Below, in pieces: positions 21,175 to 47,900 of a stretch of DNA of 64,000 bases (positions are counted from its first letter, which is position 1; each line of letters starts with the position of its first letter). The notes under the pieces were generated by a model, which did not search any database, was not told the DNA's origin, and saw only the letters and a program-made list of their open reading frames with translations. The stretch spans positions 186,001 to 250,000 of the forward strand of contig NIVC01000236.1 of NCBI GenBank assembly GCA_002269645.1, in the 5' to 3' direction. The translations under genes and the position numbers were made by a program. Source of the stretch: Macrostomum lignano (lineage: Eukaryota).

Positions 21175-22929
21175 CACATGCAACCCTCAATTACCCCAGC
21201 TAATGCTGGTACCCATTTTACAACTGGGTGAACTGAAGCAATGCAGAGTTAAGAGTCTTGCTCAATTAAGGACACAAATTGTTACGTTGGGATTCGGGAA
21301 TCGAACCCCGACCTTCAAGCAAGGACCCAATGTATATAGCTATGCAGTGGTCCTAATTGCCTTTAAGTCGTGAGAGTCCGACGCTCTAACCCCCAGAACC
21401 TAAATTACGGGGGCTACCCCCAGAAAACTTTTGCTGTAGCTTACATACTTGTACATGTTAATGTAACTTTGTTTAAAAACTTTGGACAGCTAAAAGGTTC
21501 AGAGCAATCAGAAAGCTTAAAACCAGTGTACCGGTAAATTTATGCAATGGAAAAACCCGCATTTCTGAGCGTGCAGTCTAAAACAAAATTCCAATTAAAA
21601 TCCTTATGTATACGGTAGTAGTAGTAGTAGCTACATTGCATGTGTACATGTTTGGGTAAATTGGTACATGTCGTAAATGCACACGTTGGTAAGTGAGATT
21701 GTTAAAATTCATTAATTTATCAATACTTAATTAAAATCGATATATTCTGGAAATGTGACACAAGCTGTGTTTCTTCATATTCAATATGGCATCATTTATT
21801 GCAGTAATATGATCATTAATACAACTATTTACAAGTGTACGGAACTACTGGAAAAAATTTGCCTTCATAATTCAAGTTTAATGATTTACAGATCAAGCTG
21901 CTGAGAGTACATCCGATAATTGAATCTTCATAAGGTGCCCACAGGTTTTTGAGAAGACAAAAAAGTATTTAATAACTCAAAAACAGGCAACAGTAAATTT
22001 CAAAGCAATTCCTATGTGACATTTTCACGAAAACGAACGGCCGGTGCTTGTCATTCATTGATTGGAAACAGCAGTTAGTAACTACGAAGAATTTCGGCTC
22101 AATTCCCAAGCATGTGTTTCTAAAAATGAGAAGAAAAATTCTCCGTTACAAAGCACTTATGTGCAAAAAACATGAGTACATGTTTCAGTACATGCAGTAT
22201 GGGACTGCAGATGGGAAAATTGGATTTAAAACAGGTAAATCTCAGGATGCCCAAAATCTGTGATGCCCCGGTTCTCTCCGGAAAATTTAGCTGTATCGAA
22301 TGAATATGGAAATTTGATATGCCCATTTACTCAACAGCTCTTGCAGATGAGGCAGACGAGAGAGTAGAGGATGGGAGAGGCTCTGGCCTCGCTGAACAAG
22401 AAAGTGCAGAGAGTTTAAAATAGAGGAAAAGAAGAGCACAGGGAGAAGAGGAAGCGAAGCGGGGTGAGTTAATCAGATTCTCCATCAGTCAGCCCCCCAT
22501 CCTGGGTGTTTTCTGCTCCCGGGGAACATAGCTAAGTGCAGGACGGAGAAAAGACTCCGGGTCTCTGGGGCACCGCTTGATGGCCACCGCCCTGCTGCGC
22601 TGTCGCTGGCGCGGCAAAAATCTGCGGACCCGTCGTCCGCAGCCGCCAGGCCGGGGCGGGGCCCGCATCCTGCGCAGTCTGGGCTGGCTTAAGATATGCG
22701 CGAGGATCTTCTCCTCGCACACCGAACCGAATCGCGCGGGAGAGAGGGAGGGCGGAGACGCCGCGGGCAGAGAGGAGAGCCTGGGGGACGGGCCGGAGCG
22801 CATCTAGGCCAGAGAGAGTGGTCGCATTCTCAGATGGGAATGCGGGGGCATGTTTGTAAATATTTATAGGCTCTTTACGCTGGTAACTCTCCTAACTTGG
22901 GAAAGACATGTACGGTACGAACTTGAAAG

Positions 22930-24090
22930 GAGCCGATGGGAGGAGAGCTGAAGGGAGGAGAGCTGAAGGGAGGAGAGCTGAAGGGAGGAGAGCTGAAGAG
23001 AGGAGAGCTGAAGGGAGGAGAGCTGAAGGGAGGAGAGCTGAAGGGAGGAGAGCTGAAGGGAGGAGAGCTGAAGGGAGGAGAGCTGAAGGGAGGAGAGCTG
23101 AAGGGAGGAGAGCTGAAGGGAGGAGAGCTGAAGGGAGGAGAGCTGAAGGGAGGAGAGCTGAAGGGAGGGGATCTGAAGGGAGGAGAGCTGAAGGGAGGGG
23201 ATCTGAAGGGAGGAGAGCTGAAGGGAGGGGATCTGAAGGGAGGAGAGCTGAAGGGAGGGGATCTGAAGGGAGGAGAGCTGAAGGGAGGGGATCTGAAGGG
23301 AGGAGAGCTGAAGGGAGGGGATCTGAAGGGAGGAGAGCTGAAGGGAGGAGAGCTGAAGGGAGGAGAGCTGAAGGGAGGAGAGCTGAAGGGAGGAGAGCTG
23401 AAGGGAGGGGATCTGAAGGGAGGAGAGCTGAAGGGAGGAGAGCTGAAGGGAGGAGAGCTGAAGGGAGGAGAGCTGAAGGGAGGAGAGCTGAAGGGAGGAG
23501 AGCTGAAGGGAGGAGAGCTGAAGGGAGGAGAGCTGAAGGGAGGGGATCTGAAGGGAGGAGAGCTGAAGGGAGGGGATCTGAAGGGAGGAGAGCTGAAGGG
23601 AGGGGATCTGAAGGGAGGAGAGCTGAAGGGAGGAGAGCTGAAGGGAGGAGAGCTGAAGGGAGGAGAGCTGAAGGGAGGAGAGCTGAAGGGAGGAGAGCTG
23701 AAGGGAGGGGATCTGAAGGGAGGAGAGCTGAAGGGAGGAGAGCTGAAGGGAGGAGAGCTGAAGGGAGGAGAGCTGAAGGGAGGAGAGCTGAAGGGAGGAG
23801 AGCTGAAGGGAGGAGAGCTGAAGGGAGGAGAGCTGAAGGGAGGAGAGCTGAAGGGAGGAGAGCTGAAGGGAGGAGAGCTGAAGGGAGGAGAGCTGAAGGG
23901 AGGAGAGCTGAAGGGAGGAGAGCTGAAGGGAGGAGAGCTGAAGGGAGGAGAGCTGAAGGGAGGAGAGCTGAAGGGAGGAGAGCTGAAGGGAGGAGAGCTG
24001 AAGGGAGGAGAGCTGAAGGGAGGAGAGCTGAAGGGAGGAGAGCTGAAGGGAGGAGAGCTGAAGGGAGGAGAGCTGAAGGGAGGAGAGCTT
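22930..24090. repeat. 15-bp polypurine minisatellite (gaagggaggagagct), ~77 copies
   Basis: Highly homogeneous array with a gaagggaggggatct variant. It lies within a predicted YPEL 3'-UTR intron. Confidence 0.97.
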
Positions 24091-31500: not shown

Positions 31501-32013
31501 AGAGTCTTTGTGACGCGAGCAGCTCAGAATCCATCCAAGAGCTCACTCTCAGGAAAAGAAACACTGTAATCTCATTCTTAAGCAATTAGGAAATCTTAGC
31601 CTAGGGATGACAACTACCTCAGAAATCTTCGGGCATGAGCAGCTGAGTATTCTACAATCTACAGGCTAGGGCCCTAGGCTCAGGATCTCAGCTTTAAAGG
31701 TTTATTGCACCGCTCCATAAAATTAGCAATTCACAAATCGCACGAGAAAGCTGTACTTCATTACCTTCCAGGAGCTCAGCTTGCGCTGCACCGGCAGATA
31801 CAGATCGATTTCAAACTGATACACATTGTTGCCATGACAACCATAACCTTTGGCAAAGAATGTCAGCCGACCCTCGTCCAAGTTAATAATGGGGTCCGTG
31901 ACGCCCTGCAGCTGCACAGTGAGGTACAGATTCTGGTCCTTCTGGCCCCACAGAACAAACGGGTGCAGCACTTTGCGGTCAACGGCCGAAGCGCCATTGG
32001 ATTCTTGCGTCAT
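28569..32013 (-). CDS. HACD3: Very-long-chain 3-hydroxyacyl-CoA dehydratase 3 (CS domain + PTPLA domain; exons 32013-31765, 31153-30782, 30575-30447, 29105-28569)
   Basis: N-terminal CS domain VLHPFVLWGQ..LYLTVQL..FFAKGYGCHGNNVYQF. Also YLFLYNMFQWVGF, WSAVEVVRYPYY, WLRYTMWIPLYPLGFVLE (catalytic Tyr-x6-Glu) and HMYAQRKKK. All three introns are phase-0 GT-AG. Confidence 0.95.
29195..29425. repeat. 25-bp intronic minisatellite (gacaatgggagagatagggaaacct)
   Basis: About 9 copies in HACD3 intron 3. Confidence 0.93.
29480..30350. repeat. 33-bp intronic minisatellite (acatggtgagatcagacacagattgagatatgt)
   Basis: About 26 copies with recurring variant blocks in HACD3 intron 3. Confidence 0.95.
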
Positions 32014-32323
32014 GCCTGACAAAACTTAATAGCTCGATCGATTCGATTGATTGCCTATCAATAGTTGACAGTTCCGCCTGCAAGCTGATCCGTTAGTTTA
32101 AAAACATAAATCAAAAGTTTAAATAGTTGAGTTTATTTGACAGCTACTCGAGCTGTGCTCAGCTTGAATACAAAGGTCCCGATGAGCCGACTACCAATTA
32201 GCGAGCCTTTGAGATGTCTCTCTCTGCCTACTTGCTGGATAGTCCTGGGTAGAGAAAGGGAAGGCGAGGAGAAGAGTTGAGGACAGCTTCATTAAGGTTA
32301 CAAAGATCGAAGCGCGCAGGCCT

Positions 32324-32337
32324 GTTGTCATAGTAAC
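32324..32337. promoter_or_regulatory. RFX X-box-like motif upstream of HACD3
   Basis: GTTGTCATAGTAAC fits the GTYNYCATRGNAAC consensus ~310 bp upstream of the ATG. A CCAAT lies nearby (agccaatag ~32430). Confidence 0.5.
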
Positions 32338-33655
32338 AGATGGATAGGCTAATTGGGAAGGGACAGATTGTGTCGAAGGTAAACTGCAACTATTGCAGGC
32401 TAAGTACAGGCAAATAGATGACAGCTCACAGCCAATAGCGCAGTCATAGACTCAGCAAAGCAGCAGGTCTACAACCAAGACCATGCTCATAGAGAAGCGC
32501 ATGCCACGCATTTGTACAACTGATAATAGAACAAACCCCTAAAGCTCACTGAATCACTACTTAGATCACTATGGTCATCTTCATGGCTAAAATTCATCAG
32601 TGGTATACTGGTTGCTGCTCAACAGAGTGTGCACATTGTCTCAAAGTAAAAGGGGCCTAAGCTAATGAAGATATGCAAGTATGGCAAGAAGTGTATGAGC
32701 TGCAATAGCAACTATAGAAAGGATGAGTGCATAGCAATAGATAAGTAGAACAGCAACTGCAACAGGCCAAACCACTGCTGCTGTATAAAGAAACAGGCAA
32801 TGGTCAGCAAGGACATAAACATAAACTAGCAAGTCACCAACAAATATTAAACTGTGGCCAATATAATCAAGTTTTCAATTCTACAACAAGTCTAAACAGT
32901 AGTGCCTTAATGTTAGTAATCAGCTTATCAACTTCAAGAGTTCAATGGCATGGCATATAGTCCAAGGAAACATATTACTAACATGGCTTATGGTCTATAG
33001 TGAATCATTCATTTGTGATCTATTGAACAAATGCTTTTGCTTATGTCCAAGGGAAAAATGGCCTAAGTCTTTCTACATTGTTGATGGCAATATGAGCCTT
33101 CTTAGCTATCTAAAATTATAGAATAATGACTAAAGAAGGTTTAGTTTCTACTAATAGATAGTTATAAAGATTATTCATTATATCAAACTTATATAATAGC
33201 ATCTAGTATACAAATTCTTAGCTTGACCTACTATAGCTTTTTGCTAAAACTTCAAATAAAAAAGTATAAAAAATGATATTAGCCTAATTAGGATCAAATA
33301 TTAAATATTAAGTACTTTATAAACTAATTAGCTTATAAAGATACTCAACAAATGTATAACATTCTATATGTTATATGTATACTTACGTATACTATCTACT
33401 CTATTTAGGAATGAGAGGGCCCCATTTTTTGTATCAATTTATCTTCTTATATACTTTTCATCATTCCATTTATTTTTTGAGTATATTCAAGTTATATATA
33501 AATTTTAGCCCTAGCCTCATTTATTAAGAGGATTATTTTTTTTGCAAAAAAGTATATAGTTATTTCTCTGTCTAGGGAAAATATGTTGGTTTTTTTCTAT
33601 TTATTTGGCTTATAGCTCAGAACAATCTCCTACTAAAGACTACTAAGACTATATA

Positions 33656-34915
33656 TAAGGGTTGTTCTAAAAGTTTATGGACAATTTTTTTCCAAATGAA
33701 AGGCAGTTAAGTCACCATACTTTAGGCCATAGACAGCACTTATGACCCACAACTTTTAATAACAGTGTGATCAACTATGCTTATATTATTTTTACAGCAG
33801 TCATTTAAGTTACCCACTATTTTTGGCACTATGGAAAAAATGAAAAAGCCAAGCAAAGCATAATTTGGTTTTTATGGAAAGAAGGGAAGCAATAGGCTGA
33901 TATTGTTTGTGAGTTGCATGCAGCATATGATAAAGATGCCCCCTCAAAGTCAATGGTCAGCAAGTGGGTGCAGCGCTTTGAGGATGGCTGGGAGACAGTC
34001 AAAGATCTGCCACGCAGTAGAAGGCCAGCCACCACAGTCAACATGTTCAACATTGAATGCGTGCATCAGGCACTTGATGTCAACTGCCAGATCACCATTA
34101 GTAGTTCACAAAATTCTCATGGCCAAGCTTGGGATATTGCGAGTTGTTGCTCATTGGGTCCCAGAGCTTCTGATAGATGATCAGCAACACAAGTGGGTCT
34201 ATGCATGTCAGTAGCTCCTGCAGGCCTAACTGCAATGACCCAAACTTTTTGGATTGAATTGTGACTAGGGATGAGTCGTGGATCTATTACAGTGAACCAG
34301 AGTCCAAGATGCAGAGCAATGTCTAGAAGGCAGCTAGAGAACCCACCCTAGTGAAGGCCCTGGCTGTACCATTGGCTAGAAAGCAGATAGCCACAATCTT
34401 CTAGGACAAGGAGGGCATCCTGCTCATTGACTGGCTTCTATATGGCACTACTATTACCAGTGCTTATTATATCCAAGTGCTAGAGAAATTGCCTGAAGCT
34501 ATCAAGACTGAGCACCAGGGCAAGCTAACCAGGGGGATCCTGCTGTAGCAGGACAATGCCAGGCCCCAAACCAACCAAACAGCAATGGCTGCCATCTTTA
34601 GGCTGGGCTTTGAGCTGCTGCTGCACCCACTCTATTTGCCAGACCTAGCACTAAGCAACTGTTTATGCAGATGAAGAAGTCAGTCCAAGGTTACCATTAT
34701 GGCAGTATTCAGGCCCTAGCCTCTACCGACAGCCAGTGGGTCAGAAGTACCCCCCAAAGAATTCTTTGCTGCAGGGATTGAAAAGCTACCTAAGTGCTGC
34801 ACAAGTATGTATGCCTCGAGGGCACATATTGAAAAGGTCAATGACTAAGGTTTTCAGTTTTGCTACTTTTTTAACAATAGTTCATGTTTGTCTACAAACT
34901 TTTGGAACAACCCTT
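33656..34915 (+). mobile_element. Full-length but dead Tc1/mariner (mariner-type) transposon
   Basis: 28-bp TIRs (33657-33684 / 34888-34915). Decayed transposase motifs: SKWVQRFEDG, WVP, VT(R)DESWIY, F*DKEGILLIDWL, QDNARP and HPLYLPDLALSN (=HPPYSPDLAPSD). Confidence 0.93.
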
Positions 34916-36903
34916 TTGAAATCAAACTTTGAAAAACTTTGAAATCAATATTTTTTTCAAAAGTAGTTAATAAAATGGTTAAATTATTCAATCTATAAAA
35001 CAATATGAATAAGCCTAAGGATCTAACCAAGTCTGGATAAGTCAAATATTTAAATGATTTTTATGATAATTTAATTATTATTATAATTTTAAGTTGAGTT
35101 TTGTCTATAACAAATAAATGATTGCTGGAGATTAAAATTTTCAAATTTTTTAAGACTTGAGATCTATGTATGCTTAATTGAGATAATCAAGATTTAAGAT
35201 TAAACCTAATTAGTACCTAGTAGGCCTATTTATACTTCAATCTATCAATGCCAATGTTTATTTGTTAAATGTGTACAATGATGATAATAAAAGAAAAAAC
35301 AATTATAATATAATTTTGAGCTTGTTAATAACTTGATATATATCTTATATCTAAAGCTGAGCGGACCAAGTGATCGATCAACCAGTAGACTGGGTTTAAT
35401 GCGTATCTTCTCCTAGATGGCTGCAAGCTCAAATTCGGGACTTATATATATCAATGCAGAATTTTCCTATACAACAAATAGGCTATTTTAATGTTGAAAT
35501 TTTCAAAATTAGGTCTGTTAAAAAGCAGAAAACTGTTTTCTTAACCTTCTTTGGCCATTTTGCTTCTCCAGTGGAGTTGGTAGCATGTTTGTAAAAAGAA
35601 ACACCCCAACCTTTGCCTGCAGGTTACTGTATATTGGAGGGGTGGGTGACACATGTTGGGTTGGGGCTACAGTTAAATTTTAATGATTCCCCTGGAACAG
35701 GGGGTCAAGCTGAGTGTACAAAGCAATGTACAGTGTAAACAGAGGCTATAGATAGCTAGGACTGTGTTGAGTTTCAATTGGTTTTATTATTGGTGCCTTT
35801 TAATAGGCAGCCCTGAAATTCAATGAATTGGATTGCGAGACTTTTGCTGTAATAGGCAGTGAACATATACATTCCATGTTTCAATGCTTTAAATCAAGAA
35901 GTTCAAATGCTAACTGTGCCTCAAGTTATAAGCTTTGAGAGGAGATATATTGCGAGAAAGATCTTGCAATACTGAGTTTAGGGATATAAGTTGTTTGCTT
36001 TAAATATAAAACAAAAAGCACAGCATTGAAAAAATGATTTCCATACTTTAAAACTTTTTGCAAAGATTGTAGTTATTTTTGCAATAGGTCAGTCAGACTT
36101 TGGGCCTTTTCATATTGCTTGCTCTGGTTCCAGAACCAGAACCAATTTTTGTGAAGTATAACTTTTTGTCTCCATAACTAGAGGGAGATATGTGCTATAA
36201 AGTTTTTATTATTGAATGACAATTGCCAAGAAGAAAGTGAAAAATTGTGCTAAGTTACGTTGTTAAGGCAGTCAAATATTAACAGAGTTTAATAGTTATA
36301 CTGCTGTTTTTCTTGGAATTCCGAACCAATTCTGGTTCTGGAATTGGTAATATAAAAAGGCCCATTAAGTTGGGGGAGGTTGCATATGCACATTCAAGCC
36401 AGCTATTATTTGAGTAATTTCAGTAATGGAGGTGGGTGACAAATTTTAATTGGTTTTTATTATTGGTGCCTTCAGTCAGTCAGATAAGAGAGTAGAGAAA
36501 AGAGTGAAAGGAGAAGAGAGGAGAGATAATAGAAAACCAAGAAAAGACAGTAGATAAAAAAGTAGAGAGAAGAGAGAAGAGATAAAAGAGTAGGGAGGAG
36601 AGATGAAAGAGTAAGAGGAGAGGAGACATGAGAGTCTTAGTCTGAATGATGGCAGTAGATAAATGGTATTTGAGAAGTTCTATAGAGGATTTGGAAAGGA
36701 TTTGGAAGTCTGGAATTCTAGTCATGGGATTCAGCTGATGGATTTTAGGAAATGGAATTCTGGCAATGGGAGTTCTATTCCCTTTTCCTCCAACAGAGGA
36801 ATTGGCCTCGTCAAATATAAATAATAATATGAGGCAATCTTCAATTTTATTGGAACAAATTTTTTTTCACATGAAAAATAGGCCCTAGTAAAATAGAAAG
36901 TCA

Positions 36904-37200
36904 TTAGTCTTTAGTATCAATATTAGGTATATTATGTAATATTAGGTACTCATTAAGATGGATGTCAAAATCAAATAGGGCATTGCTAGTGCCGTGCATT
37001 GCCCTGAATTTGGCCTTGACACCTGCCCATGACCTTTCAATGGTGTTTGTATTTGTATGGATAGTTAGGTTGTAGGGGTCTAGAAAATGGAGTTGGTAAT
37101 TGATAGCTAGCTCCACATGATTCTGCAAGCCATTGTAGGCTGATTGTAGTTGGTGCTCTAGGCCTCTTAGAGCCATTTGGCTATCACTAAATAGGCTGAA
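36904..37200 (-). mobile_element. Merlin (IS1595/ISXO2-like DDE) transposase fragment
   Basis: SAYNGL..H..AINY.LHFLDP....HTN..TIERSWAGVKAKFRAMHGTS..LFD matches the AY.GL..H..VNH...F.DP..G.HTN.IE..W...K motif of this family. Confidence 0.75.
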
Positions 37201-37722
37201 AAGTTTAAAAATAATAAAATATGGTAAACTAGAAGATTGCCAAATACAATAATATTATAGTTACCAATACTTATGGATAGGCCTATATAGTCATAAATCT
37301 TGATATTTTTTCAAGATCTTGAAACCAAGATTAAGATTGAGAAAATTGCCAAGATCTTGACAATCAAGACCAAGATTGAGATCTTGCCTGACCCAAAATA
37401 GGCTAATTGATAATAACTTATCTTAAGCTCTGCCATAACTAAACTTTTCCTATGCTATGGCTATATTTATATTTGTACTTATAGCCATATCAAATTTTTT
37501 TCATTACAACAATAAAAATCCTAAACAACAGTTAAAAGTTATTATCAAGTACTTTAAAATATAAGTGTTTAAGGCTAAGTTGCCCTAAGGTTTAATTTAA
37601 TATTTAAAAAATTAAATCTATTAAATAATTGAATTAGGCTACTGATTAAGTTAGATATAAATGTAGGCTAGTAGAATTTTTTAAATTTATTTGTTACTTT
37701 CTATCAATTTATGAATGATTGG

Positions 37723-37901
37723 CAGTGGCGTAGCCCTAAATTTTCTTTTGGGAGAATGGAGATAGATAGATAAAACTTTTGTGTTTGGGAGAATCCCTTA
37801 GGCTTACACGAGTATTACTTAGAAAATCGGGCATTTTCTTTCAACAGTTTAACTGTTTCGGTTTTTTAGGGAGATGCATCCGTAGCCCTCCTACGCCACT
37901 G
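37723..37901. mobile_element. Short hAT-type MITE
   Basis: TIRs cagtggcgtag / ctacgccactg with CpG intact. TSD not evident. Confidence 0.6.
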
Positions 37902-39499
37902 ATTAAAAACAACAAAATGACAATACAATCTGAATAAACAGTTCATGCATCCTGATTCCTAATCCGGATTGGCAAAATCACTTGTTTATTGTGACTACCC
38001 AATGGCTAATTGTAGTGGTAAGTGTTTAGCTCGAGCAAAAAAAACTGCTGGCTTGTATGCTTCCTGCTCGATAAAAACAATATAATCTTAACATTAATAT
38101 AAAGTTCAAATAAAGGGCTCTGGCTGGCCAGCTGAGTAGTGAGTACGCCAGTGCATCGATCGTAACCCCTATGGGTGGGTTATACTAAATTTTTTTTAAC
38201 TTTTTAAAAAAAGCTCTAAGACGCATTTTATCGTTTTAATAAAGTATTTTTATAACCTTTTATCTGGTAAAGAAAACTGAAATAAATTAGTAGTAGTAGT
38301 AAGTTGGCTCAGGCAAGAAGCCTGTTTGGCCAATATATTTCTATGTATTTAAGATTGCTTCAGGAATAGGAGACAATATTTTAGCACTAGTTATTTAATT
38401 ATGATTAGTACGAGTTTTGCAAAATGGTATTTGAAAGAACGCGGAAAAGTTATTAACGATACTTGGACGACTAACGAAGCGAAAGAAAAAGCAAGGAGTT
38501 AAAAAAAGTATTGCAGTTAATAAAAGTAAAAACGAAAGAAAAATGAACAAAAACGAACTTCGAAGGGACTTTACGTTAAGCGAATGACGACGATTTAAAT
38601 AGGTATTAGATAGGAAACTAATTAAATACTAATTAAGTGCTAATTAAGTAGGAAATTAAAAATGGGAAAGGCGGATTTATTTCACTGCTGATATGTCTGT
38701 TTCAGTTTGCATAACTGTTTTAGCTATTCATGACTTCATATATTTTAGCTACACCAGTGAGCTCTTTTCTGACTCTTTTTTCATTTGTAGCATATCCTAA
38801 CTTGTGTACTTGCTTGTCATTTAGGAGGTACTGACAGAAGTATTATTGATTAGCCAATTTTTTATTTAAATATTACTTTTTTGCGTGCATGTGCTTTAAT
38901 TTAAATAAATACCTACGCATACGCAATTTCAGATTTTTACTGTTCAATGTTCCGTGTTTTCTGTACTCGCTCGCCAGCTCGCTACTCGTTAAAAATTAAG
39001 AGTATAAAAAATTTTGTAACTTTTTTATGGCGCATGTCTAAGGTAACACACTTAGGTGGCCACAGTACAGGCATTGCTTTAAATCAGCCAATGCAAAGAA
39101 ATAGGCCTAACTTTTAAGTTTTAACCTCTAATTTAAATTACTATTGGCTATTCTAGGGATTTCTAGCTCCTGGGGTATAGAGAAGAGTCAGATGATCATT
39201 ATGATGTCTTTTAATTCTTAACTATAACTTTGACTAAAGACCTAATTAACAATTATAGGCATAATTTTCAGTTATATATTATTGACTAATTGATTACTTA
39301 GTCTTAAGTTAAAAATTTAAATTAAAGCTAGGCCTACCTAAAACTCATTACTCATAGACATACATAGTCATAGGTAGTCATAGTCACAGAGGTTGAAATA
39401 AGTAAGACTAAGAGGAATTGATAAAAGGAGAGCTTCTATTTTTATACCTTACCCTCTTCTCAGTCGTAGCCTTCCCTTCAAACAAAGCAATAAAAAAGG

Positions 39500-40480
39500 T
39501 TTGCCTTGTGGTCTATCACCCTTTTTTATTTGACCAATTTCCTAAAATAGATTTAGGATGCTTTTTTAGACAAAATTAGCAAATAAAAAGATTGGCTTTC
39601 CTTATTCCTTTGGTTTACGATCACCCCAACTAGTGATGATCACCACAAAAAAACAGTTATAAGACAAAATTCATAGTTTTTAATGAAACAAAATCAAATG
39701 TTGGCAAACTGACTTTGTTTTTTTTCAAAAGATGGTAAGATTGTCGTAGCACCTTATATTTCACCTTTGGTTTATGATCACCTAAACATATGACATATGT
39801 TGCCCATTGAAATGATCACGAACCAAAGCTGGCAATAGGAAAACCTGTCAAACTAATTTCAACTATCACATCACAAGTTTGAGCTATAGTAGCCTATATA
39901 TTTTACCTTTGGTTTACAATCACCCAAACAATGTTGCCCATTATGTTGCCCATTAAAATGATTGTAAACTGAAGTTGGCTATAAGAAAGTGTACTAGGGT
40001 TGATATGCTTTCCTACAACCAGCTTCGGTTCACAATCATTTCAATGGAGTGCATGTATAAAAGTGATTGTAAACCAAAAGTGAAAGGGGGTGGGGCACTG
40101 AAGATTAATTATATTAGCTAGGGTTGACATGCTTTCCTATAATCAGCTTTAGATAATCGTAAACTCAATGTGATATATATAAGCTACTAATAAACCAATG
40201 TACAAATCTTTTCAATTTTAAATAACAAAGTTAGTTGATCAGCCAACTTTTGCTTTCTTTTTATTTGAAACTATACACCATCAGTTTTTATGTCTTAGTT
40301 TTAAATACATCATTTTTGCAGTGCAGTAAGCAAAATATAAAGTGATCGTAAACCAAAACTGGAAAAATAGAAGGTGATCATAAACCAAAACTGGCAAAAT
40401 AGATGGTGATCGTAAACCAAAAGACTGCCAGAAGATTGGGCTATTAAATTGGAAGAATACTAATAATAACAATAAAACTT
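39500..40480. mobile_element. Foldback-like element with ggtttacgatcacc subrepeats
   Basis: The left part has ttggtttacgatcacc, tatgatcacc and tacaatcacc. The right part has the reverse complements gtgatcgtaaacc, gtgatcataaacc and gtgattgtaaacc. Confidence 0.6.
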
Positions 40481-42054
40481 TCAAAAGCTTACTAAAACCC
40501 TCCTAGTAAAGCCTAATCTAATTTCTAAATAAGAATATAAGTTATAACTCTAATTTTAATTTATTAAAGCTAGGCCTATAAATATTTTAGTTTAGTATTA
40601 TAATATAAATGTCATTGTTATTATTTTCAAGTCATAAGACAAAGTATATAGCCTAAGCATAATATTAATAAGACTAAGACTAGCCTAATGAATTTCTTTG
40701 AATTTGTAAAAAAATATAAAGTTTTATTAGCTATTATAGTGTTTTTATATATAATAATATAAATTATTATTCATTCTAGTTTTTTGTTATGAAGCCATAG
40801 CATAAGGTCTACTAATTAAAAATTAGGATATGAAACCATATTTAAGACCTAGGTTTAGTTTCAATTCAAGATAGTTTATATATAATCTTTGACCTAAATA
40901 TTTTTTATAAAAAAGAAAACTAGTTTTGATTTATTTGGTGATGTAGTTTAGCTATAGAAATAATCTACTATAATAAGCATAATTTTTTATGCCTATCCTT
41001 CTAACTCTTTAGTATTTTTACCCTTTTAATATTTATTAGCTTCTTTAGAATAATTTTCTAGTTGTACTAATTAGTTAACATTCAATTTAAAAAAATTTCA
41101 TTTTAAATAGTGGTTTTTATTTAATGTTTATAGACTTTTGTCTTAGCTAATAAGCTTCTGTTGTCTTTTATAAAAGTTTACTCCAATATTTTTTTGAAAT
41201 CTATTATTATATTAAATGAATAAAAAAATATATTTACATTTGCTTTAATTCAATTCAATTAAACAAAAACTTAGGCTTTTTTTATATTTTCAAATAAAAT
41301 AAATTAGGTATGTTAGGCTGTTCTCTAATATAGACTATAGATTATATTAAACAATATTAATACTTTAGACAAAAAGAATAATATGAAAATAATAAAGCAA
41401 ATCTTATAAACTATACATAAAAATATCTAAGTTATCCTTACCTTAGGCAAAATGTTTTATTTTATATACTTTAAAGTGTTAGATAAATCATCTTTAAGCA
41501 AAGTGATTTTAGTTATGGTAGCTATATACCCTAAAGCATAAAATAGCATATTGGCTAATACATTTGCTAATAATAAATAATACTAAAGGTCTATTATTGC
41601 CTATTAGTAAAAAAACAGTAATATTCTTGAGATTTATGATTTTCTAATGAGGTTATTTCTTTTAGCTCATAAGTATCCTTAATTTTAATCAACCTAAAAC
41701 CTATTGTCAAACATAAAATGATTGAAATCTAAACTATAGAATAATATGTGTTTTATCATAAAGAATTTGTTACCTAAATTTTAAGTATAAAGTTAGTATA
41801 AAGAAAAGTATTTCTGATAATTTTCTAAAATTTTATTGCTATCTTTATGACTAGTTTGTAGCTTTTCATTTTGAAACAAGACAATATAACCAATTTATAT
41901 TACATTTTAATTATGTTTCTGAATTTTTATGTTATATATACTAATGTTTTTGTGCTTATGAATGTTGATTTCAAAATTTAAATGTAAACAATATTATTTG
42001 GATATTAATGTCTGTCACTCCACTATAAAAATATATTTATTTTTCTTTTTGTGC

Positions 42055-43959
42055 ATGATGCTTGAGCAGATTAAATTGGTCTGCAAGAAGCTGGCTGCTA
42101 GTGAGGAGCCAGTCCGAATCAAGGGCTTCTTAGGGGCAAAGAAGCTTCTTTCTGGTGCAGAGGCAGTATCATTTGATAACATGATGCTCATAATGAAAGG
42201 CCTGCACTACATGCTGTGGATGCAGGACCAGCCAATTAAACACGAGGACATTGTAGACATGATCTGCTCTCTTCTGGGTGCGATATCCAGTCCAAAGGAC
42301 AAGTTGAACTTTATTAAAGCGCTATTCGAGACAGAAGCCAGAGAATGGTCTTCAATCGACTTCTGGCGCGCGGACAAGTTCATGATGCTCGTGCGTCGCT
42401 TCCTCAAAGCCTCCCTGGCGTTTTTGCAGTCCAACGAATGGAGCAGCGAACTGGTCAGTCAGTTCGTTCAAATCCTCAGGGACAGCGTTGTTAATGCCGA
42501 TTTCAACCAGCCTAGCAACGGCCTGAAGCTGCACTTGGCTGACATTGTCTGCGAGGAGCTCAGCATCACCACTGCCGGTCCAGATGCTGTGCTGGCAATT
42601 TTGCGACCCTTCATCGATATTGTGGCGTCCGGGATGCACAAGCACCACGTGGTGGACAAGGTTGAGCAGGCGGTGCTGCAGTATCTGGCCGATCAGGCAC
42701 TCTACCAGGCGGAGTCCGCGCAGCAGGACTCGGTTGAGTCGGAAGTCTGCTTAGTTGACATCGACATGGAGGAGCTGTGCAAGTGCCTCTTTGCCCTGGG
42801 ATCAGATCCCAGCGTGAAAAGCCCCAATCGAAAGCGACTGTTTCACTGGTACAAGACGTTTAGAAATATTCTGAGCGGCAATGTTGGATCGGAGGGCCTG
42901 GTGCCCGCCGGACCGACCCTGGGCAAGGAGGAAATCACAGCGGCGGTTGCCCGCCTCATTAAACAGGAGAACAAGCGGAGAAAAAAGAAGAAAGCAAAAC
43001 GTCTAGTTGAGGACGGCCAAGCAGGAAGTTCGAATACGCAGCCCAGTGCACCAGCGTCAGGCGCTAAGCTGACCAAGGTCAAGACCCCGAAAGCTTTGGC
43101 CAAGCAAAAACAGACTGTTGGAGGCGCCAAGTCTTCATTGGCTTTGGCAAAAAAGAAAGCCATTGCTGCTGGCGCTTCGCCTCAGGGTGCCAGCATTGAA
43201 GCGCAGCCTGGAGTGGCCAAGTCCCCCCAAAGCCCAAGAACTGCCAAGCAGTCTGGGCAGTCGCCAAAATCCAATGAGAAATCGCCCGCCATCCAAGGAG
43301 CGCCTGAAGTTTCAGCCAAAGAGAAGTCGCCTGTCATAAAAAAATCGCCAAAAGGCCCAGCCCCGGCCAAAGCCAAAGAAAAATCGCCTGCTGTCCAGCA
43401 ATCGCCCCAGGTCTCAAATAATAAAAAATCACCTCAGGGCTTGGCCAAAGAGAAATCGCCCGCGACCTCGAAGTCTCCCAAGGACTCTGTCAAGCCGGAG
43501 TCCCCAGCCGGTGGCAAGCGCAAGCAGCCGTCTTTGTCGCCTTTGACGGCTGCCGGTGCGGGCAGCAGTACGCCGCCATCAGCTAAGCGCGCGCGCATGT
43601 CGCCCGCAGTGTCAGCGGACTGCAGCGTCACCCCGGCATCGCAGTCCGCAACGCCGAAGCAGCAGCTGCTTCTGTCCACGCCCCAGAGTGCTGACTGCGA
43701 CAGCGAGGGAAAACAGAATCGTTCCGTAACATTTGGCAAGATATTTCGCAAGCGATTCAACAAGAAGGACCGGGTTGTTACGCCGACGGCTTCGGGTGAC
43801 GATAAAACGCCGGAGCGGTCGATTTTGAAGAAGTCGAGTGGCTTGGGCTCCTCGCTGAGGCTGCGCTCGCCAGGCTCCAAGAAGTCGCCAGGCTCCAAGA
43901 AGTCGCCGGCCTCCAAGAAGTCGCCGGCCTCCAAGAAGTCGCCGCAGAATCGCGTTTGA
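42055..43959 (+). CDS. RRP1: Ribosomal RNA processing protein 1 (Nop52 domain) with long Lys/Ser/Pro-rich tail; intronless
   Basis: Nop52-domain motifs KLAASE, KGLHYMLWMQDQP and REWSSIDFWRADKFMMLVRRFL, plus NRKRLF. The first plausible ATG is 42055; the ORF-track extension is AT-rich non-coding-like sequence. Confidence 0.9.
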   Translation: MMLEQIKLVCKKLAASEEPVRIKGFLGAKKLLSGAEAVSFDNMMLIMKGLHYMLWMQDQPIKHEDIVDMICSLLGAISSPKDKLNFIKALFETEAREWSSIDFWRADKFMMLVRRFLKASLAFLQSNEWSSELVSQFVQILRDSVVNADFNQPSNGLKLHLADIVCEELSITTAGPDAVLAILRPFIDIVASGMHKHHVVDKVEQAVLQYLADQALYQAESAQQDSVESEVCLVDIDMEELCKCLFALGSDPSVKSPNRKRLFHWYKTFRNILSGNVGSEGLVPAGPTLGKEEITAAVARLIKQENKRRKKKKAKRLVEDGQAGSSNTQPSAPASGAKLTKVKTPKALAKQKQTVGGAKSSLALAKKKAIAAGASPQGASIEAQPGVAKSPQSPRTAKQSGQSPKSNEKSPAIQGAPEVSAKEKSPVIKKSPKGPAPAKAKEKSPAVQQSPQVSNNKKSPQGLAKEKSPATSKSPKDSVKPESPAGGKRKQPSLSPLTAAGAGSSTPPSAKRARMSPAVSADCSVTPASQSATPKQQLLLSTPQSADCDSEGKQNRSVTFGKIFRKRFNKKDRVVTPTASGDDKTPERSILKKSSGLGSSLRLRSPGSKKSPGSKKSPASKKSPASKKSPQNRV

Positions 43960-44917
43960 CCCGAGTCGGTGTGTGGCCTGTCTGCAGCGCTGCGGGACTT
44001 TCTGTGGCAGCATACGGTTGGGGAATGAGGTGAGTAAATTCTGCTGCTCGCATGTTTGATTTCAGCCTTTTATCTGCCATCAGAAATATCAACTGTCATC
44101 CCATGCTAGAGCCTGTTATTTAAAAGTTCAGTTAGTTCTAGTTAGAGGCAGGGAGCTGCCCATTCCGCCGATTCCCTTGAGCATGTCACACAAGCGCGCG
44201 GATACGTACGCAGTCATACGCACAGGCACACACTCACACAGGAGTGTACAGCGGCCCTAAACTTTATGTATCGGTAGGCATGTACACTTCACTGCGCCTT
44301 GCGGATTGGTCCTCAAGAACGTTAATTGAACGAGAAGACACAAGCCGGACTTCCAATTTAGCCTAAAGTAATGTGACGGCACCTGGGCCGCTGGCACATA
44401 CTGAAGTGCAGATATGCCAAGCAATACTTTCACTTGTGCTCTTATTTCATGAATTCAAAGTATAATCTTTCAATAAAAGACGAACATTTTTTCAGATTGA
44501 AATTCAACAGTTCGCTTGGCTACCTGGCGAGCTGGGAATGTAATATTTCGGCATTTATGATGAGGCCAACTGCGTTCCGCTCTTCGAGATTGACCAGCTT
44601 CCTTCTATCTCTTGTTCTTCGTAGCCTGAAATGCCTGTTTTTTCGCAGACTATTGTAAATGCCTAATTTACACTTATTATTAAATTAAGGTTTCATTGCT
44701 TTTTTTATAATATTACTCATAGTAGTTTAGACAATGCGCGAGTTTATCAATCTGCTATCTAAACTCCCTGCGGGCATTCTCTGCTGATATTGTAGTTTAG
44801 CCATATTGTACGTGCGCCCTAAACCATCCGCCATGCTGCACTGACACTTATAAACTGGTTATGTTCTGCTTTTTAATTTATTATCTAATTCGATTGACTT
44901 GTTGTTCAATTTCTAGT

Positions 44918-47900
44918 ATGCCAACAGAATCAGTGCGAGTGCACACTTGCTTATATTTTGGCCGTATGTTTGCAGCCTTAGCCGTTTGAGCATTTTATTA
45001 TTGTGCTTTGTTTCACACCTGTTCCCAGCTTCATTGTCATAATTAATAATTTTTATGGACTGGACTGGCGTGACTACGGAACTGATATGCGATCGCAGTG
45101 ACTAAGTTATAAGCAGTCTGGTCTTCATTTCCTTATTGTGAATTATTTCTTTATCGTAAGGTAAATTGAGTATTTGGGCGGGTGCTATTGTAGTGCAACA
45201 CTAAGGGGTGCTCAGGCTAGAACTAAGGGGTGCTCAGGCTACTGTAGTGCAGAACTAAGGGATGCTCAGGCTACTGTAGTGCAGAACTAAGGGGTGCTCA
45301 TGCTACTGTAGTGCAGAACTAAGGGGTGCTCATGCTACTGTAGTGCAGAACTAAGGGGTGCTCAGGCTAGTGTAGTGCAAGACTAAGGGGTGCTCAGGCT
45401 AGTGTAGTGCAAGACTAAGGGGTGCTCAGGCTACTGTAGTGCAAGACTAAGGGGTGCTCAGGCTACTGTAGTGCAAGACTAAGGGGTGCTCAGGCTAGTG
45501 TAGTGCAGAACTAAGGGGTGCTCAGGCTAGTGTAGTGCCAGACTAAGGGGTGCTCAGGCTACTGTAGTGCAAGACTAAGGGGTGCTCAGGCTACTGTAGT
45601 GCAAGACTAAGGGGTGCTCAGGCTACTGTAGTGCAGAACTAAGGAGTGCTCACGCTACTGTAGTGCAAGACTAAGGGGTGCTCAGGCTACTGTAGTGCAA
45701 GACTAAGGGGTGCTCAGGCTACTGTAGTGCAAGACTAAGGGGTGCTCAGGCTACTGTAGTGCAAGACTAAGGGGTGCTCAGGCTACTGTAGTGCAGAACT
45801 AAGGGATGCTCAGGCTACTGTAGTGCAGAACTAAGGAGTGCTCAGGCTACTGTAGTGCAGAACTAAGGGGTGCTCAGGCTACTGTAGTGCAGAACTAAGG
45901 GGTGCTCAGGCTACTGTAGTGCAGAACTAAGCAGTGCTCAGGCTACTGTAGTGCAGAACTAAGGGGTGCTCAGGCTACTGTAGTGCAGAACTAAGGGGTG
46001 CTCAGGCTACTGTAGTGCAGAACTAAGGAGTGCTCAGGCTACTGTAGTGCAGAACTAAGGGGTGCTCAGGCTACTGTAGTGCAGAACTAAGGGATGCTCA
46101 GGCTACTGTAGTGCAGAACTAAGGAGTGCTCAGGCTACTGTAGTGCAGAACTAAGGAGTGCTCAGGCTACTGTAGTGCAGAACTAAGGAGTGCTCAGGCT
46201 ACTGTAGTGCAAGACTAAGGGGTGCTCAGGCTACTGTAGTGCAGAACTAAGGGATGCTCAGGCTACTGTAGTGCAGAACTAAGGAGTGCTCAGGCTACTG
46301 TAGTGCAGAACTAAGGGGTGCTCAGGCTACTGTAGTGCAGAACTAAGGGATGCTCAGGCTACTGTAGTGCAGAACTAAGGAGTGCTCAGGCTACTGTAGT
46401 GCAGAACTAAGGAGTGCTCAGGCTACTGTAGTGCAGAACTAAGGGATGCTCAGGCTACTGTAGTGCAGAACTAAGGGATGCTCAGGCTACTGTAGTGCAA
46501 GACTAGGGTGCTCAGGCTACTGTAGTGCAAGACTAAAGGGTGTCAGGGGTTCCTGCAATGTACTGCTGACTCAAAGTGGCCCCACTAGTATGATACAGAA
46601 CTCCTGCTTCTCCTGTTTGCAATAGCGGCAATCCAAATCCTCGCTGACTTCAGTCTCTGGACGCCCGTCTGGCATCCCTGGCCGAGTGCCAGCGGCGGCT
46701 CTCTGGCTTTCGGGACGCCCAACCCACTGAGCTGCCATCGGAAGCGGAGCTGGCCGCCTCCTGGTCTGGCTTCATCTCCGCCTTTGCCGAGCTGTCAGCT
46801 CAGGCCGGTCAGCAGCGAACTCGCGCCCTGGATTCGGCCGCCGCGACCATCAAGCGGGTGGCCGCCAAGGGCCGCCGCCAGTTTCAGTTTCTGCGCGCCG
46901 GATTCGTTCAGCTGGCGTCCGCCTGGCTGAGCCGCGCCAACTCGTGGCGCGAGCGCTCCAGCGTGCTGCTGGAACTGGCAGTCAGCTGCAGCCTCTACTG
47001 GATCTGCTGCTCCGGGCAACGCCGCAAACGGCGCCGGCAGAAACAGCCGAGCGAAGTTGACGCGACTGCAGCGACTGTTGCTAAGAGAGTTGGCCGCCTC
47101 GGCGACCTCTGGGTGGACGGCCTTCTGCTCGGCGGCACTGACTGCCCTGCTGGATTCGAGGAGGACAGGTTCGATTCTCGGCCAATTGACAGGGTTTTAA
47201 TGAAATAAGGGTGCTGGAAGTGCCTGAAGATAGGGGTAGTGATGTAGAGAGGTCACTGCACTGCCATTCGTACGCCAGCGCACACTGGTTTCACTCTTCT
47301 CTCCGTGCCTGCAGCGACTCGGCGTTGGAGTTCCGCTGCCTGCTGGTCACGCTGCTGCACGAGTACGTGGGCCGGTTCGCCTACGTCAAGGGACTTCATC
47401 CGGCCTTCGCTGACCTCTTTGTCCGTCTGGTGGCCGGCCTGCCCGCCGGTTCGCCACTGTCCGAGCACGTTGTTAGGTGCGTATTCGAGCACTACTACTG
47501 CCAGTACTATCCGCTGAGTAAGATTCGCACGGAGCTGAGCAGCGGCAACCCAGCCCGGCTCACTGGCGCCGACATCGGCCTCGCCCTCACCAAGCACGGC
47601 TTCTTGGCTCACCGCATCAACTATGCCAGCTTGCTGCGCCAGCTGATTGGCTATGCCAGAATGCCGGGCACGCCCGCGCCGACCAGGGACCTCCTGCTGC
47701 GTCTGGCCGCCATGGCCGCCTGCGTCATCGAGGACCGGCCGCCGCACACCAGCTGGAAATCGGTGCAGCCGGACGACTTCAGGCGGCTGCTGACTGCGGC
47801 AGAGACCGACGCGGACGGCGATGAAGATGTGGAGAATCAAGATTTGGAAACCACTTTGGGTGAGCGAAATCAATCCTGACTTGATGCCCTTCTCAATATA

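What the first reader, a model, noticed from the sequence alone, without database searches (positions are those of the whole stretch)
33656..34915. RIP-like C->T hypermutation (CpG plus CpA/TpG->TpA) of a mariner transposon in an animal genome
Seen: the two 28-bp TIRs (aagggttgttcTaaaagtttAtggacaa vs aagggttgttccaaaagtttgtAgacaa) differ at exactly three sites, and each is CpA->TpA or TpG->TpA. Relative to the mariner motif consensus, the transposase damage I could interpret is almost all C->T/G->A. TpG/CpA-context changes: TGG->TAG twice (V*KAA, F*DKEG), a third TAG before DNARP, VTG->VTR (actGgg->actAgg), SG->SR, AG->AR, ATG->ATA and CCA->CTA. CpG-type changes: R->W, R->C, T->M, S->L and D->N. 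Only 7 CpG remain in ~1260 bp, against roughly 60 expected at ~45% GC (hand estimate). Established: CpG decay is the usual methylation footprint, whereas CpA->TpA targeting of repeats is the hallmark of fungal repeat-induced point mutation. Inference: this animal may have a repeat-directed cytosine-modification/mutation system acting on both CpG and CpA, for example non-CG methylation by a DNMT3-like enzyme or a deaminase.
Basis: partly seen in the sequence, partly recalled or inferred. Interest (0 to 1): 0.92.

Follow-up and report, generated by a model that had tools for sequence, protein, structure and literature searches.

The report
Dead flatworm mariner with cytosine decay
This is a long-dead mariner transposon in the flatworm Macrostomum lignano that lost about 90% of its CpG sites, and many CpA and CpT cytosines, through slow C-to-T decay; this looks like wear from DNA methylation, not like the fungal RIP defence.

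Summary
A 1.26-kb mariner lies at 33656-34916. Its 28-bp TIRs differ at 3 sites, it has 7 CpG against 62 expected, and all six premature stops arose by C>T or G>A.

The window is Macrostomum lignano contig NIVC01000236.1. Reviews report that this flatworm keeps DNMT1 and DNMT3.

I polarised the changes against three intact relatives that are CpG-rich (63-81 CpG each). C>T on the window copy then follows a context order: CpG about 45% per strand (24 of 27 dinucleotides lost), CpA 25%, CpT 16%, CpC 4%. T>C is 3-6%. The same test run on the intact relatives shows no such excess. The CpA excess is therefore real (p=7e-5 against CpC).

It is not RIP-like:
- CpG is the main target, not CpA.
- CpA and TpG remain over-represented.
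- The RIP composite index (-0.86) is no different from that of the intact relatives.
- C>T and G>A are equal in number and randomly interleaved.
- The AT-rich flanks outside the element are also CpG-poor (o/e 0.40).
- All three TIR differences sit at ancestral CpGs: a single hit on one arm, a double hit on the other.

Best reading: gradual deamination of methylated cytosines in place, possibly including DNMT3-type non-CG methylation. No other copy of the family could be obtained, so whether the process is directed at repeats remains untested.

The parts
33656..34916 (+). Whole dead mariner element (1261 bp).
   Evidence: Aligned end to end with intact relatives L001, L004 and L006, which end in TA|CGAGGGTTG...CAACCCTCG|TA. 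The window reads TA|TAAGGG...CCCTTT|TG. The one-base extension is my inference.
33657..33684 (+). Left terminal inverted repeat as reported: AAGGGTTGTTCTAAAAGTTTATGGACAA
   Evidence: Ancestral CpGs at CCG and CGCG now read CTA, TA and TG.
34888..34915 (-). Right terminal inverted repeat; reverse complement AAGGGTTGTTCCAAAAGTTTGTAGACAA
   Evidence: The same ancestral CpGs now read CCA, TG and TA.
33654..33655 (.). Left copy of the TA target-site duplication
   Evidence: Read from the sequence by analogy with the TA flanks of L001, L004 and L006.
34917..34918 (.). Right copy of the target-site duplication, now TG (one change from TA). Tentative.
   Evidence: Read from the sequence. A T-run here makes the register uncertain.
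33831..34845 (+). Mariner transposase pseudogene. The ATG is retained. Six in-frame stops lie at 33893-5, 34212-4, 34255-7, 34324-6, 34402-4 and 34546-8. There are seven indels, including a 35-bp deletion after 34091 and a 7-bp deletion after 34658. The third catalytic D is changed to N.
   Evidence: Translations, Pfam, protein alignment to P0001-P0006, lesion table.
31501..33655 (.). Left AT-rich, CpG-poor flank (GC 38%, CpG o/e 0.47). It appears to share the element's mutational regime.
34917..41900 (.). Right AT-rich, CpG-poor flank (GC 30%, CpG o/e 0.36; CpA and TpG o/e about 1.0; TpA 0.94).

Best explanation
An autonomous mariner (DD34D type, TA target, about 30-bp TIRs beginning CGAGGGTTGTTC) inserted into non-coding DNA of Macrostomum lignano, died, and has since decayed in place. 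The decay is dominated by independent, strand-symmetric C>T transitions. Their rate depends on the 3' neighbour: CpG >> CpA > CpT >> CpC, with CpC close to background. The most likely cause is spontaneous deamination of 5-methylcytosine in a germline-methylated, AT-rich compartment that contains both the element and its flanks. CpG methylation (DNMT1/DNMT3) removed about 90% of the CpGs. A weaker non-CG component then acted on CpA and CpT. That component is either off-target DNMT3 methylation or an intrinsic context effect on deamination. It turned native CpA/TpG, and some former CpGs, into TpA. Shown here: the element's anatomy, the spectrum, its context order, its strand symmetry, its absence in the intact relatives, and the CpG-poor flanks. 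Taken from the literature: that the host has DNMT1 and DNMT3. Inferred: that methylation is the cause, and that non-CG methylation contributes.
For: Host and locus: window = NIVC01000236.1:186001-250000 of M. lignano Mlig_3_7 (PMC5730564).

Spectrum against three intact outgroup lineages (GC 52-55%, 63-81 CpG each):
- C>T is 25/55 at CpG per strand (24 of 27 dinucleotides lost), 25/99 at CpA, 12/73 at CpT and 4/91 at CpC.
- T>C is 3-6% and transversions are 1-10%.

Method control: with each intact relative as the focal sequence there is no CpG or CpA excess.

Changes made after the element died (codon positions 1-2 of residues invariant in six intact proteins):
- 28 of 35 are C>T/G>A.
- C>T is 17.4% per site against T>C 1.5% (p=1e-6).
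- By context: CpG 9/30, CpA 6/24, CpT 2/21, CpC 1/42.

CpA events fall on codon positions 1, 2 and 3 alike.

Strand symmetry: 46 C>T against 53 G>A, runs z=0.15.

Decay happened in place: the two TIR arms carry different outcomes of the same ancestral CpGs.

The effect is regional, not confined to the element: flanks have CpG o/e 0.36-0.47 and 16-20 kb has 0.09, while GC-rich exonic parts have 0.87-0.94.

The +2 base also matters: CAC 7/23, CAG 7/21, CAT 4/11, CAA 0/15.

The 5' base order is AC and CC > TC > GC.

Precedent: in human cells, deamination of CpA methylated by DNMT3A yields CpA>TpA alongside CpG>TpG (PMC11564873).

The host is reported to keep DNMT1 and DNMT3 (PMC11292947, PMC9246332, PMC10658182).
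Against: Only one copy was analysed, and the outgroups are 67-70% identical. Ancestral states are therefore secure only at about 825 sites, and counts per context are small. CpA against CpT is not significant (p=0.19). No methylation data exist for this locus. Reviews describe 5mC in adult M. lignano as low and its genomic pattern as unknown (PMC9246332). Rates derived from the mariner predict an equilibrium GC of 10-20%, yet the flanks are at 32% with only intermediate dinucleotide biases. So either the element is hit harder than its flanks or the flanks are not at equilibrium. Differences between homeologs in the neighbouring genic region show no CpG effect at all (7 differences over about 1,190 CpG+TpG-context pyrimidine sites, 460 of them CpG). 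This fits compartmentalised methylation but is not direct evidence for it.
Confidence: 0.6

Rival explanations
1. Methylation-independent neutral decay. The element is simply drifting toward the AT-rich composition of its surroundings under a general GC>AT mutation bias. The ranking CpA > CpT > CpC would then reflect intrinsic sequence-context effects on cytosine deamination (less stable stacking next to A or T) plus small-sample noise.
For: The flanks are at 30-38% GC. C>T is the commonest spontaneous mutation in most organisms (general knowledge). CpA against CpT is not significant. The dinucleotide biases of the flanks (CC/GG 1.20, CT/AG 1.18, TC/GA 0.86) lie between a model with no context effect and the context-dependent model.
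Against: The CpG rate is about 24 times the CpC rate, and CpC C>T (4%) equals the T>C background. There is therefore no general GC>AT bias at all; the whole excess depends on context. CpG o/e of 0.11 in the element and 0.09-0.47 in neighbouring non-coding DNA is hard to obtain without methylation. To my knowledge, animal genomes that lack methylation keep CpG near expectation.
Confidence: 0.2
2. One reading: a RIP-like defence triggered by homology. It would recognise duplicated DNA and deaminate cytosines, preferentially at CpA, in the germline of an animal.
For: C>T/G>A dominate and native CpA>TpA is elevated. The non-CpG order CpA > CpT > CpC matches, as I recall, the preference reported for Neurospora RIP. 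The TpA count doubled relative to intact relatives, from 30-38 to 75.
Against: CpG is the preferred target, not CpA. CpA and TpG remain over-represented. The RIP indices fail, and the composite is unchanged relative to intact relatives (thresholds from PMC7882544). There are no strand-coordinated runs. DNA next to the element is also CpG-depleted. Signatures of RIP are reported only from ascomycete fungi (PMC12543289). The copy number of this family in the genome is unknown.
Confidence: 0.04
3. Editing by a single-strand DNA cytidine deaminase of the AID/APOBEC type, acting during transposition or replication.
For: The spectrum is almost purely C>T/G>A. As I recall, AID/APOBEC-like deaminases are known in some invertebrates.
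Against: The dependence is on the 3' neighbour. There is little 5' specificity: A 17%, C 18%, T 17%, G 12% at non-CpG sites. Known APOBECs read the 5' base (TC, CC or WRC). There is no strand bias and no clustering. The TIR arms decayed independently after insertion.
Confidence: 0.04
4. Most of the changes were inherited. The family's master copy was already CpG-poor and TpA-rich before this copy inserted, for example after long residence in a methylated genome or after horizontal transfer.
For: The nearest available relatives are distant (57-60% aa, 67-70% nt). Part of the branch therefore predates the insertion.
Against: Six nonsense mutations, seven indels, and 35 changes at residues invariant in six intact transposases cannot have been present in an active master copy. 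The two TIR arms show different decay products of the same CpGs.
Confidence: 0.07

Closest known systems
Methylation-driven CpG decay of dead transposons, the classical footprint of 5mC deamination (for example, old mariner and other repeat copies in vertebrate genomes)
   Same: About 90% of CpGs are lost. They are replaced by TpG and CpA, which become over-represented (o/e 1.33 and 1.48). The changes are strand-symmetric, gradual and occur in place. The host has DNMT1 and DNMT3.
   Different: The host is a flatworm whose 5mC is reported as low and whose methylation pattern is uncharacterised. The non-CpG C>T rate depends strongly on context (CpA 6x and CpT 4x the CpC rate). As far as I recall, this is much stronger than in mammalian neutral DNA.
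CpA>TpA mutagenesis from deamination of non-CG methylation made by DNMT3A (signature SBS96 in MBD4-deficient uveal melanoma, PMC11564873)
   Same: CpG>TpG and CpA>TpA occur together. AC and CC are the most mutable 5' contexts. CAC and CAG are favoured over CAA.
   Different: That case is somatic, occurs in human tumours and depends on a repair defect. There the CpG:CpA burden is about 9.5:1. Here the per-site rate ratio is about 4:1, CpT is also raised, and the setting would be an invertebrate germline. No methylation data exist for this locus.
Fungal repeat-induced point mutation (RIP; Rid1- and Dim2-dependent)
   Same: C>T/G>A transitions inactivate a transposon, many create stop codons, and CpA>TpA is elevated.
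   Different: Here CpG is the main target. There is no CpA/TpG depletion, the RIP indices are negative, there are no strand-coordinated runs, and the flanks are affected too. A homology trigger was not tested. Signatures of RIP are reported only from Ascomycota (PMC12543289).
mariner family of Tc1/mariner DNA transposons (Mos1, Hsmar1/SETMAR)
   Same: The size is about 1.3 kb with about 30-bp TIRs and TA flanks. The domains are HTH_48 and Transposase_1. The intact relative P0001 matches Mos1 transposase 3HOS at E=1.6e-58 and has DD34D spacing.
   Different: This copy is a pseudogene. The closest intact relatives found (environmental and SRA contigs) are only 57-60% identical at protein level, so the sub-lineage is not named.

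Membership tests
mariner (Tc1/mariner superfamily) | Transposase with an N-terminal HTH and a DDE/D catalytic domain of the mariner type | tested here: met
   Pfam Transposase_1 scores 40.6 bits (cut-off 24) and HTH_48 scores 26.5 bits (cut-off 24.1) on the conceptual translation. Relative P0001 matches Mos1 3HOS at E=1.6e-58.
mariner (Tc1/mariner superfamily) | DD34D catalytic triad | tested here: met
   In P0001-P0003 I counted 34 residues between the D of (H/Q)DNARPH and the last D of SPDLAPSD in the alignment. In the window copy the third D is N and a 7-bp deletion follows it, so the feature is met ancestrally and destroyed here.
mariner (Tc1/mariner superfamily) | Short terminal inverted repeats and a TA target-site duplication | tested here: met
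   The TIRs are 28 nt and 89% complementary. TA lies on the left. The right side reads TG, which is tentative. Relatives are flanked by TA.
RIP (repeat-induced point mutation) | Dinucleotide indices: TpA/ApT high, (CpA+TpG)/(ApC+GpT) low, composite >0 | tested here: not met
   The values are 0.86, 1.72 and -0.86. Intact relatives have composites of -0.63 to -0.86. The thresholds are >1.15, <=0.75 and >0 (PMC7882544).
RIP (repeat-induced point mutation) | CpA is the dominant target context | tested here: not met
   The per-cytosine rate is 1.10 at CpG against 0.29 at CpA. CpA is second, followed by CpT.
RIP (repeat-induced point mutation) | Triggered by sequence duplication and confined to repeats (plus limited leakage) | not testable with these tools
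   No other copy of the family could be retrieved. The flanks, which are not part of the element, are also CpG-poor. This argues against confinement to the repeat.
RIP (repeat-induced point mutation) | Strand-coordinated runs of C>T or G>A | tested here: not met
   46 C>T against 53 G>A, with 51 runs against 50.3 expected.
RIP (repeat-induced point mutation) | RID or DIM-2 type cytosine methyltransferase homologue in the host | not testable with these tools
5mC-deamination decay of a methylated transposon | CpG depletion with reciprocal TpG/CpA excess, symmetric on both strands | tested here: met
   CpG o/e 0.11, CpA 1.48, TpG 1.33. Fates of ancestral CpGs: CA 11, TG 8, TA 2, CG 3. Strand symmetry.
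5mC-deamination decay of a methylated transposon | The host has maintenance and de novo DNA methyltransferases, and the locus is methylated in the germline | tested here: inconclusive
   DNMT1 and DNMT3 are reported for M. lignano (PMC11292947, PMC9246332). Methylation of this locus cannot be tested here.
Non-CG (DNMT3-type) methylation footprint | C>T ranking CpA > CpT > CpC at native non-CpG sites, with CAC and CAG favoured | tested here: met
   25/99, 12/73 and 4/91. CpA against CpC p=7e-5; CpA against CpT p=0.19. CAC 7/23, CAG 7/21, CAT 4/11, CAA 0/15. The counts are small and come from a single copy.
Non-CG (DNMT3-type) methylation footprint | Direct detection of mCA or mCT | not testable with these tools
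   This needs EM-seq, bisulfite or nanopore data.
AID/APOBEC editing | Specificity for the 5' neighbour (TC, CC or WRC) and strand-clustered edits | tested here: not met
   The 5' base has little effect (12-18%), whereas the 3' base has a large effect. There is no clustering.

The most novel reading that the evidence does not exclude
The germline of Macrostomum lignano methylates transposon-rich, AT-rich non-coding DNA rather than gene bodies. It does so at CpG and, at roughly a quarter of that mutational weight, at CpA and CpT. G:T repair is weak enough that the methylation leaves a heavy CpG>TpG plus CpA>TpA footprint. This would be a TE-directed methylation system with non-CG activity in an invertebrate, acting in effect as a slow mutagenic transposon inactivator.
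Probability: 0.22. Interest if true: 0.65.

Novelty: new member of a known kind. Interest (0 to 1): 0.35.

Why it matters
If the ordinary reading is right, this is one more dead mariner worn down by methylation. It does give sequence-level evidence that CpG hypermutation operates in M. lignano non-coding and TE DNA but not in the neighbouring exons. That is useful because reviews describe the genomic pattern of 5mC in free-living flatworms as unknown (PMC9246332). If the CpA and CpT component reflects real non-CG methylation, it would be an invertebrate germline counterpart of a mutational process so far documented in human somatic cells. It would also show methylation serving genome defence in a phylum where most studied members have lost DNMT1 and DNMT3. 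It is not evidence for RIP in animals.

Tried and rejected
More copies of the family:
- The protein search found nothing above 60% identity.
- The window holds no second copy.
- The metagenome scan returned only distant mariners of 26-46% identity, by their contig series apparently a few related metagenome sets.
- TIR pattern scans of the genome and viral collections gave 0 hits.

Reaching the insertion in a homeologous contig:
- Exact-product look-ups of the RRP1-like ORF failed.
- The HACD-like query returned no M. lignano protein.
- The 98%-identical paralogue P0139 sits on NIVC01001262.1, which ends 1.4 kb upstream of the gene, short of the mariner.
- The 99.85% duplicate NIVC01001263.1 would carry only about 2 differences in the element, so I did not pursue it.

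Independent spectra from the same genome:
- Slicing minisatellites by period was spoiled by register shifts and showed no C>T bias.
- Self-BLAST found only one 3-copy dispersed repeat.
- Differences between homeologs in the genic 41-52 kb region numbered only 90 and showed no CpG or CpA effect.

Equilibrium simulation from the mariner's rates compared with flank composition was indecisive.

Rfam found nothing in the window.

A UV signature was rejected: there is no dipyrimidine preference and CpC is the coldest context.

Wasik et al. 2015, the primary methylation report for the species, is not held in the library.

Full report
**What is there.** The segment is a decayed mariner.
- Two 28-nt inverted arms (33657-33684 and 34888-34915) with 3 mismatches enclose 1.2 kb. 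The TIR sequence occurs nowhere else in the window.
- The three forward frames together spell a mariner transposase broken by stops and frameshifts. Pfam Transposase_1 and HTH_48 both pass their cut-offs.
- The closest intact proteins in the 5.8-billion-protein collection are P0001-P0003 (57-60% identity, 352-353 aa). P0001 matches Mos1 transposase 3HOS at E=1.6e-58 and has DD34D spacing.
- I fetched their DNA (L001-L006), which represents three lineages, and aligned it to the window. These elements end in TA|CGAGGGTTGTTC...GAACAACCCTCG|TA.
- By that alignment the window element runs from 33656 to 34916, with TA on the left and a probable decayed TA (now TG) on the right.
- Relative to the intact ORF, the copy keeps its ATG (33831). 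It carries six in-frame stops and seven indels, including 35-bp and 7-bp deletions.

**Where it is.** A single-exon gene of the window (3629-5047, minus strand) is on record in GCA_002269645.1. Locus L066 from NIVC01000236.1 is 100% identical to window 1629-7047. The window is therefore Macrostomum lignano Mlig_3_7, NIVC01000236.1:186001-250000 (assembly identity: PMC5730564).
- A 99.85% duplicate (NIVC01001263.1) and a roughly 97% homeolog (NIVC01001262.1) also exist. This fits the neopolyploid genome.
- Reviews state that M. lignano, unlike planarians and parasitic flatworms, keeps DNMT1 and DNMT3 and has low 5mC, with an uncharacterised genomic pattern (PMC11292947, PMC9246332, PMC10658182).

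**Checking the observation.**
- CpG: 7 observed against 62 expected (o/e 0.11) at 44.4% GC.
- The intact relatives have 63-81 CpG, 52-55% GC and TpA o/e of 0.45-0.51.
- All six stops arose by C>T or G>A: three CAA/CAG>TAG, one CGA>TGA and two TGG>TAG.
- A caveat on this list: a single transition can only create a stop from CAA, CAG, CGA or TGG, so any list based on stops is bound to be rich in CpA and TpG.
- The three TIR differences are real, but the relatives show these positions were CpGs (…TTCCGAAAGTTCGCG…). The left arm now reads CTA, TA, TG and the right arm CCA, TG, TA. They are independent decays of the same CpGs after insertion, with three of six having taken a second hit to TpA.
- Given a second-step probability of 10-25%, three or more double hits out of six has p=0.016-0.17.

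**An unbiased spectrum.** At alignment columns where the three outgroup lineages agree, the window shows 99 C>T/G>A changes, 17 T>C/A>G changes and 40 transversions.

| 3' context | C>T events | Share |
|---|---|---|
| CpG (per strand) | 25/55 | 45% |
| CpA | 25/99 | 25% |
| CpT | 12/73 | 16% |
| CpC | 4/91 | 4.4% |
| T>C, all contexts | | 2.6-6.1% |

- At CpG, 24 of 27 dinucleotides were lost. Their fates were CA 11, TG 8, TA 2 and other 3.
- CpA against CpC gives p=7e-5. CpA against CpT gives p=0.19. CpA against CpC+CpT gives p=0.0014.
- Majority-rule ancestors give 22%, 15% and 10% for CpA, CpT and CpC (p=0.005 for CpA against CpC).
- Expressed as rates, CpG:CpA:CpT:CpC is 1.10:0.29:0.18:0.045.
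- The result is stable whichever pair of outgroups is used. It disappears when an intact relative is made the focal sequence: every context then shows 3-12%, with no CpG or CpA excess. It is therefore not an artefact of the method or of codon structure.
- CpA events occur at codon positions 1, 2 and 3 alike (6/22, 4/15, 9/40).
- I then restricted the count to codon positions 1-2 of residues that are invariant in six intact relatives. An active element could not have carried changes at these sites. There, 28 of 35 changes are C>T/G>A. C>T is 17.4% per site against T>C 1.5%. By context: CpG 9/30, CpA 6/24, CpT 2/21, CpC 1/42.
- The +2 base also matters: CAC 7/23, CAG 7/21, CAT 4/11 against CAA 0/15 (p=0.008).
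- The 5' base matters little (A 17%, C 18%, T 17%, G 12%).

**Why it is not RIP-like.**
- CpG is the principal target, not CpA.
- CpA and TpG are over-represented (1.48 and 1.33) and TpA is still below expectation (0.77).
- The RIP product, substrate and composite indices are 0.86, 1.72 and -0.86. The intact relatives give 0.57-0.62, 1.20-1.43 and -0.63 to -0.86. The composite has not moved toward RIP. It is far from the RIPper thresholds of >1.15, <=0.75 and >0 (PMC7882544).
- C>T and G>A are equal in number (46:53) and interleave at random (51 runs against 50.3 expected). This argues for many independent events rather than processive or strand-wise episodes. For the same reason, together with the missing 5'-base specificity, it argues against APOBEC-type editing.
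- The depletion is not confined to the repeat. The AT-rich DNA on either side has CpG o/e of 0.36-0.47, and 16-20 kb has 0.09. GC-rich exonic stretches have 0.87-0.94.
- Signatures of RIP are reported to be restricted to ascomycetes (PMC12543289).

**Best mechanism.** The order CpG >> CpA > CpT >> CpC, with CpC close to background, matches as I recall the substrate preference of DNMT3-type enzymes. It parallels a documented human case in which deamination of CpA methylated by DNMT3A produces CpA>TpA alongside CpG>TpG, with AC and CC as the most mutable 5' contexts (PMC11564873).
- I therefore read the element as a dead transposon lying in a germline-methylated, AT-rich compartment and being eroded by 5mC deamination.
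- A non-CG contribution is plausible but unproven.
- The alternative is an intrinsic context effect on deamination of unmethylated cytosine. That could explain CpA/CpT > CpC, but it explains the 24-fold CpG effect and the CpG-poor flanks poorly.

**Controls that were weak or indecisive.**
- Differences between the window and its 97% homeolog in the genic 41-52 kb region (90 substitutions, 46 transitions and 44 transversions) show no CpG or CpA effect. This fits an unmethylated gene compartment, but these sites are under selection and the changes are unpolarised.
- The minisatellite variant spectra were unreliable.
- I simulated sequence evolution to equilibrium under the mariner-derived rates. 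This predicts 10-20% GC, CC/GG 1.46-1.70 and CA/TG 0.65-0.88. The flanks show 32% GC, 1.20 and 1.02, which lies between that model and one with no context effect. Either the element is hit harder than its surroundings or the flanks are not at equilibrium.

**Limits.** No second copy of this family could be obtained. The homeologous contig ends before the insertion site. Three things therefore remain untested: whether the process is directed at repeats, how far changes are shared among copies, and the family's copy number. All per-context counts come from one 1.26-kb element.

**Verdict.** The RIP label is rejected. The weaker form of the interpretation, a cytosine-modification process acting on CpG and CpA, possibly through DNMT3, is supported as a lead. 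This is a new member of a known kind with a modestly interesting twist, and I score its interest at 0.35.

Noticed in passing
window 1-64000: The window is Macrostomum lignano Mlig_3_7 contig NIVC01000236.1:186001-250000. The same region exists as a 99.85% duplicate (NIVC01001263.1, 6 mismatches in 5.4 kb) and as a roughly 97% homeolog (NIVC01001262.1). This is as expected for this neopolyploid genome with a redundant assembly.
   Followed up: yes
window 1-8000 and 40001-44000 versus 16001-20000 and 31501-41900: CpG o/e is sharply mosaic. It is 0.87-0.94 in GC-rich exonic stretches but 0.09-0.47 in AT-rich non-coding stretches. As I recall, this is the opposite of the usual invertebrate pattern, in which methylated gene bodies are the CpG-poor part. 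It suggests that historical methylation here targets non-coding and TE DNA.
   Followed up: partly
window, 51 TRF rows; e.g. 10408-11566, 22930-24089, 45219-46547, 53711-55538, 56126-57721, 61579-62841: Minisatellites and microsatellites are extraordinarily dense. Examples are 22 bp x53, 15 bp x77, 32 bp x42, 17 bp x108, 46 bp x35 and (CAGG)x316. Several have extreme strand composition: GC skew is +0.50 at 22-24 kb and -0.63 at 54-56 kb.
   Followed up: partly
window 20450-20603 and 20633-20827: Two adjacent arrays of a 16-bp unit (TTTCACAAGGTCGAAA) lie in opposite orientation, forming a large imperfect palindrome of tandem repeats.
   Followed up: no
window 8467-8858 and 9343-9747: A pair of roughly 400-bp inverted segments, 67% identical and about 500 bp apart. 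They could be the arms of a foldback-type or other old DNA element.
   Followed up: no
window 5711-6003, 21183-21319, 60403-60654: A short dispersed repeat is present in three copies at 78-81% identity. It may be a MITE or SINE-like family. Three copies are too few for a spectrum analysis.
   Followed up: no
window 3629-5047 (-): A single-exon 472-aa gene rich in Ala, Thr and Ser contains a 30-bp coding minisatellite (12 copies, TNATAAPKTI-type repeats). It is annotated in the assembly, has no Pfam hit, and is identical on two contigs.
   Followed up: partly
window 40746-41229 versus L068:205-677; L068:1-204: The homeologs are colinear and 89-97% identical up to about 1.2 kb upstream of the RRP1/Nop52-like gene. 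Beyond that they diverge completely. L068 also lacks a roughly 210-bp segment (about window 41230-41442) that the window contains. The AT-rich block that holds the mariner may be absent or rearranged in the other subgenome.
   Followed up: partly
L001-L006 (environmental JGI metagenomes 3300038379 and 3300043259; SRA runs SRR12687280, SRR30276804/8, SRR31730527): Apparently intact, CpG-rich mariners of the same sub-lineage occur on short contigs from unrelated samples. They have full ORFs of 352-353 aa, TA flanks and TIRs beginning CGAGGGTTGTTC. The lineage therefore seems to be active somewhere today. Its hosts are unknown.
   Followed up: partly
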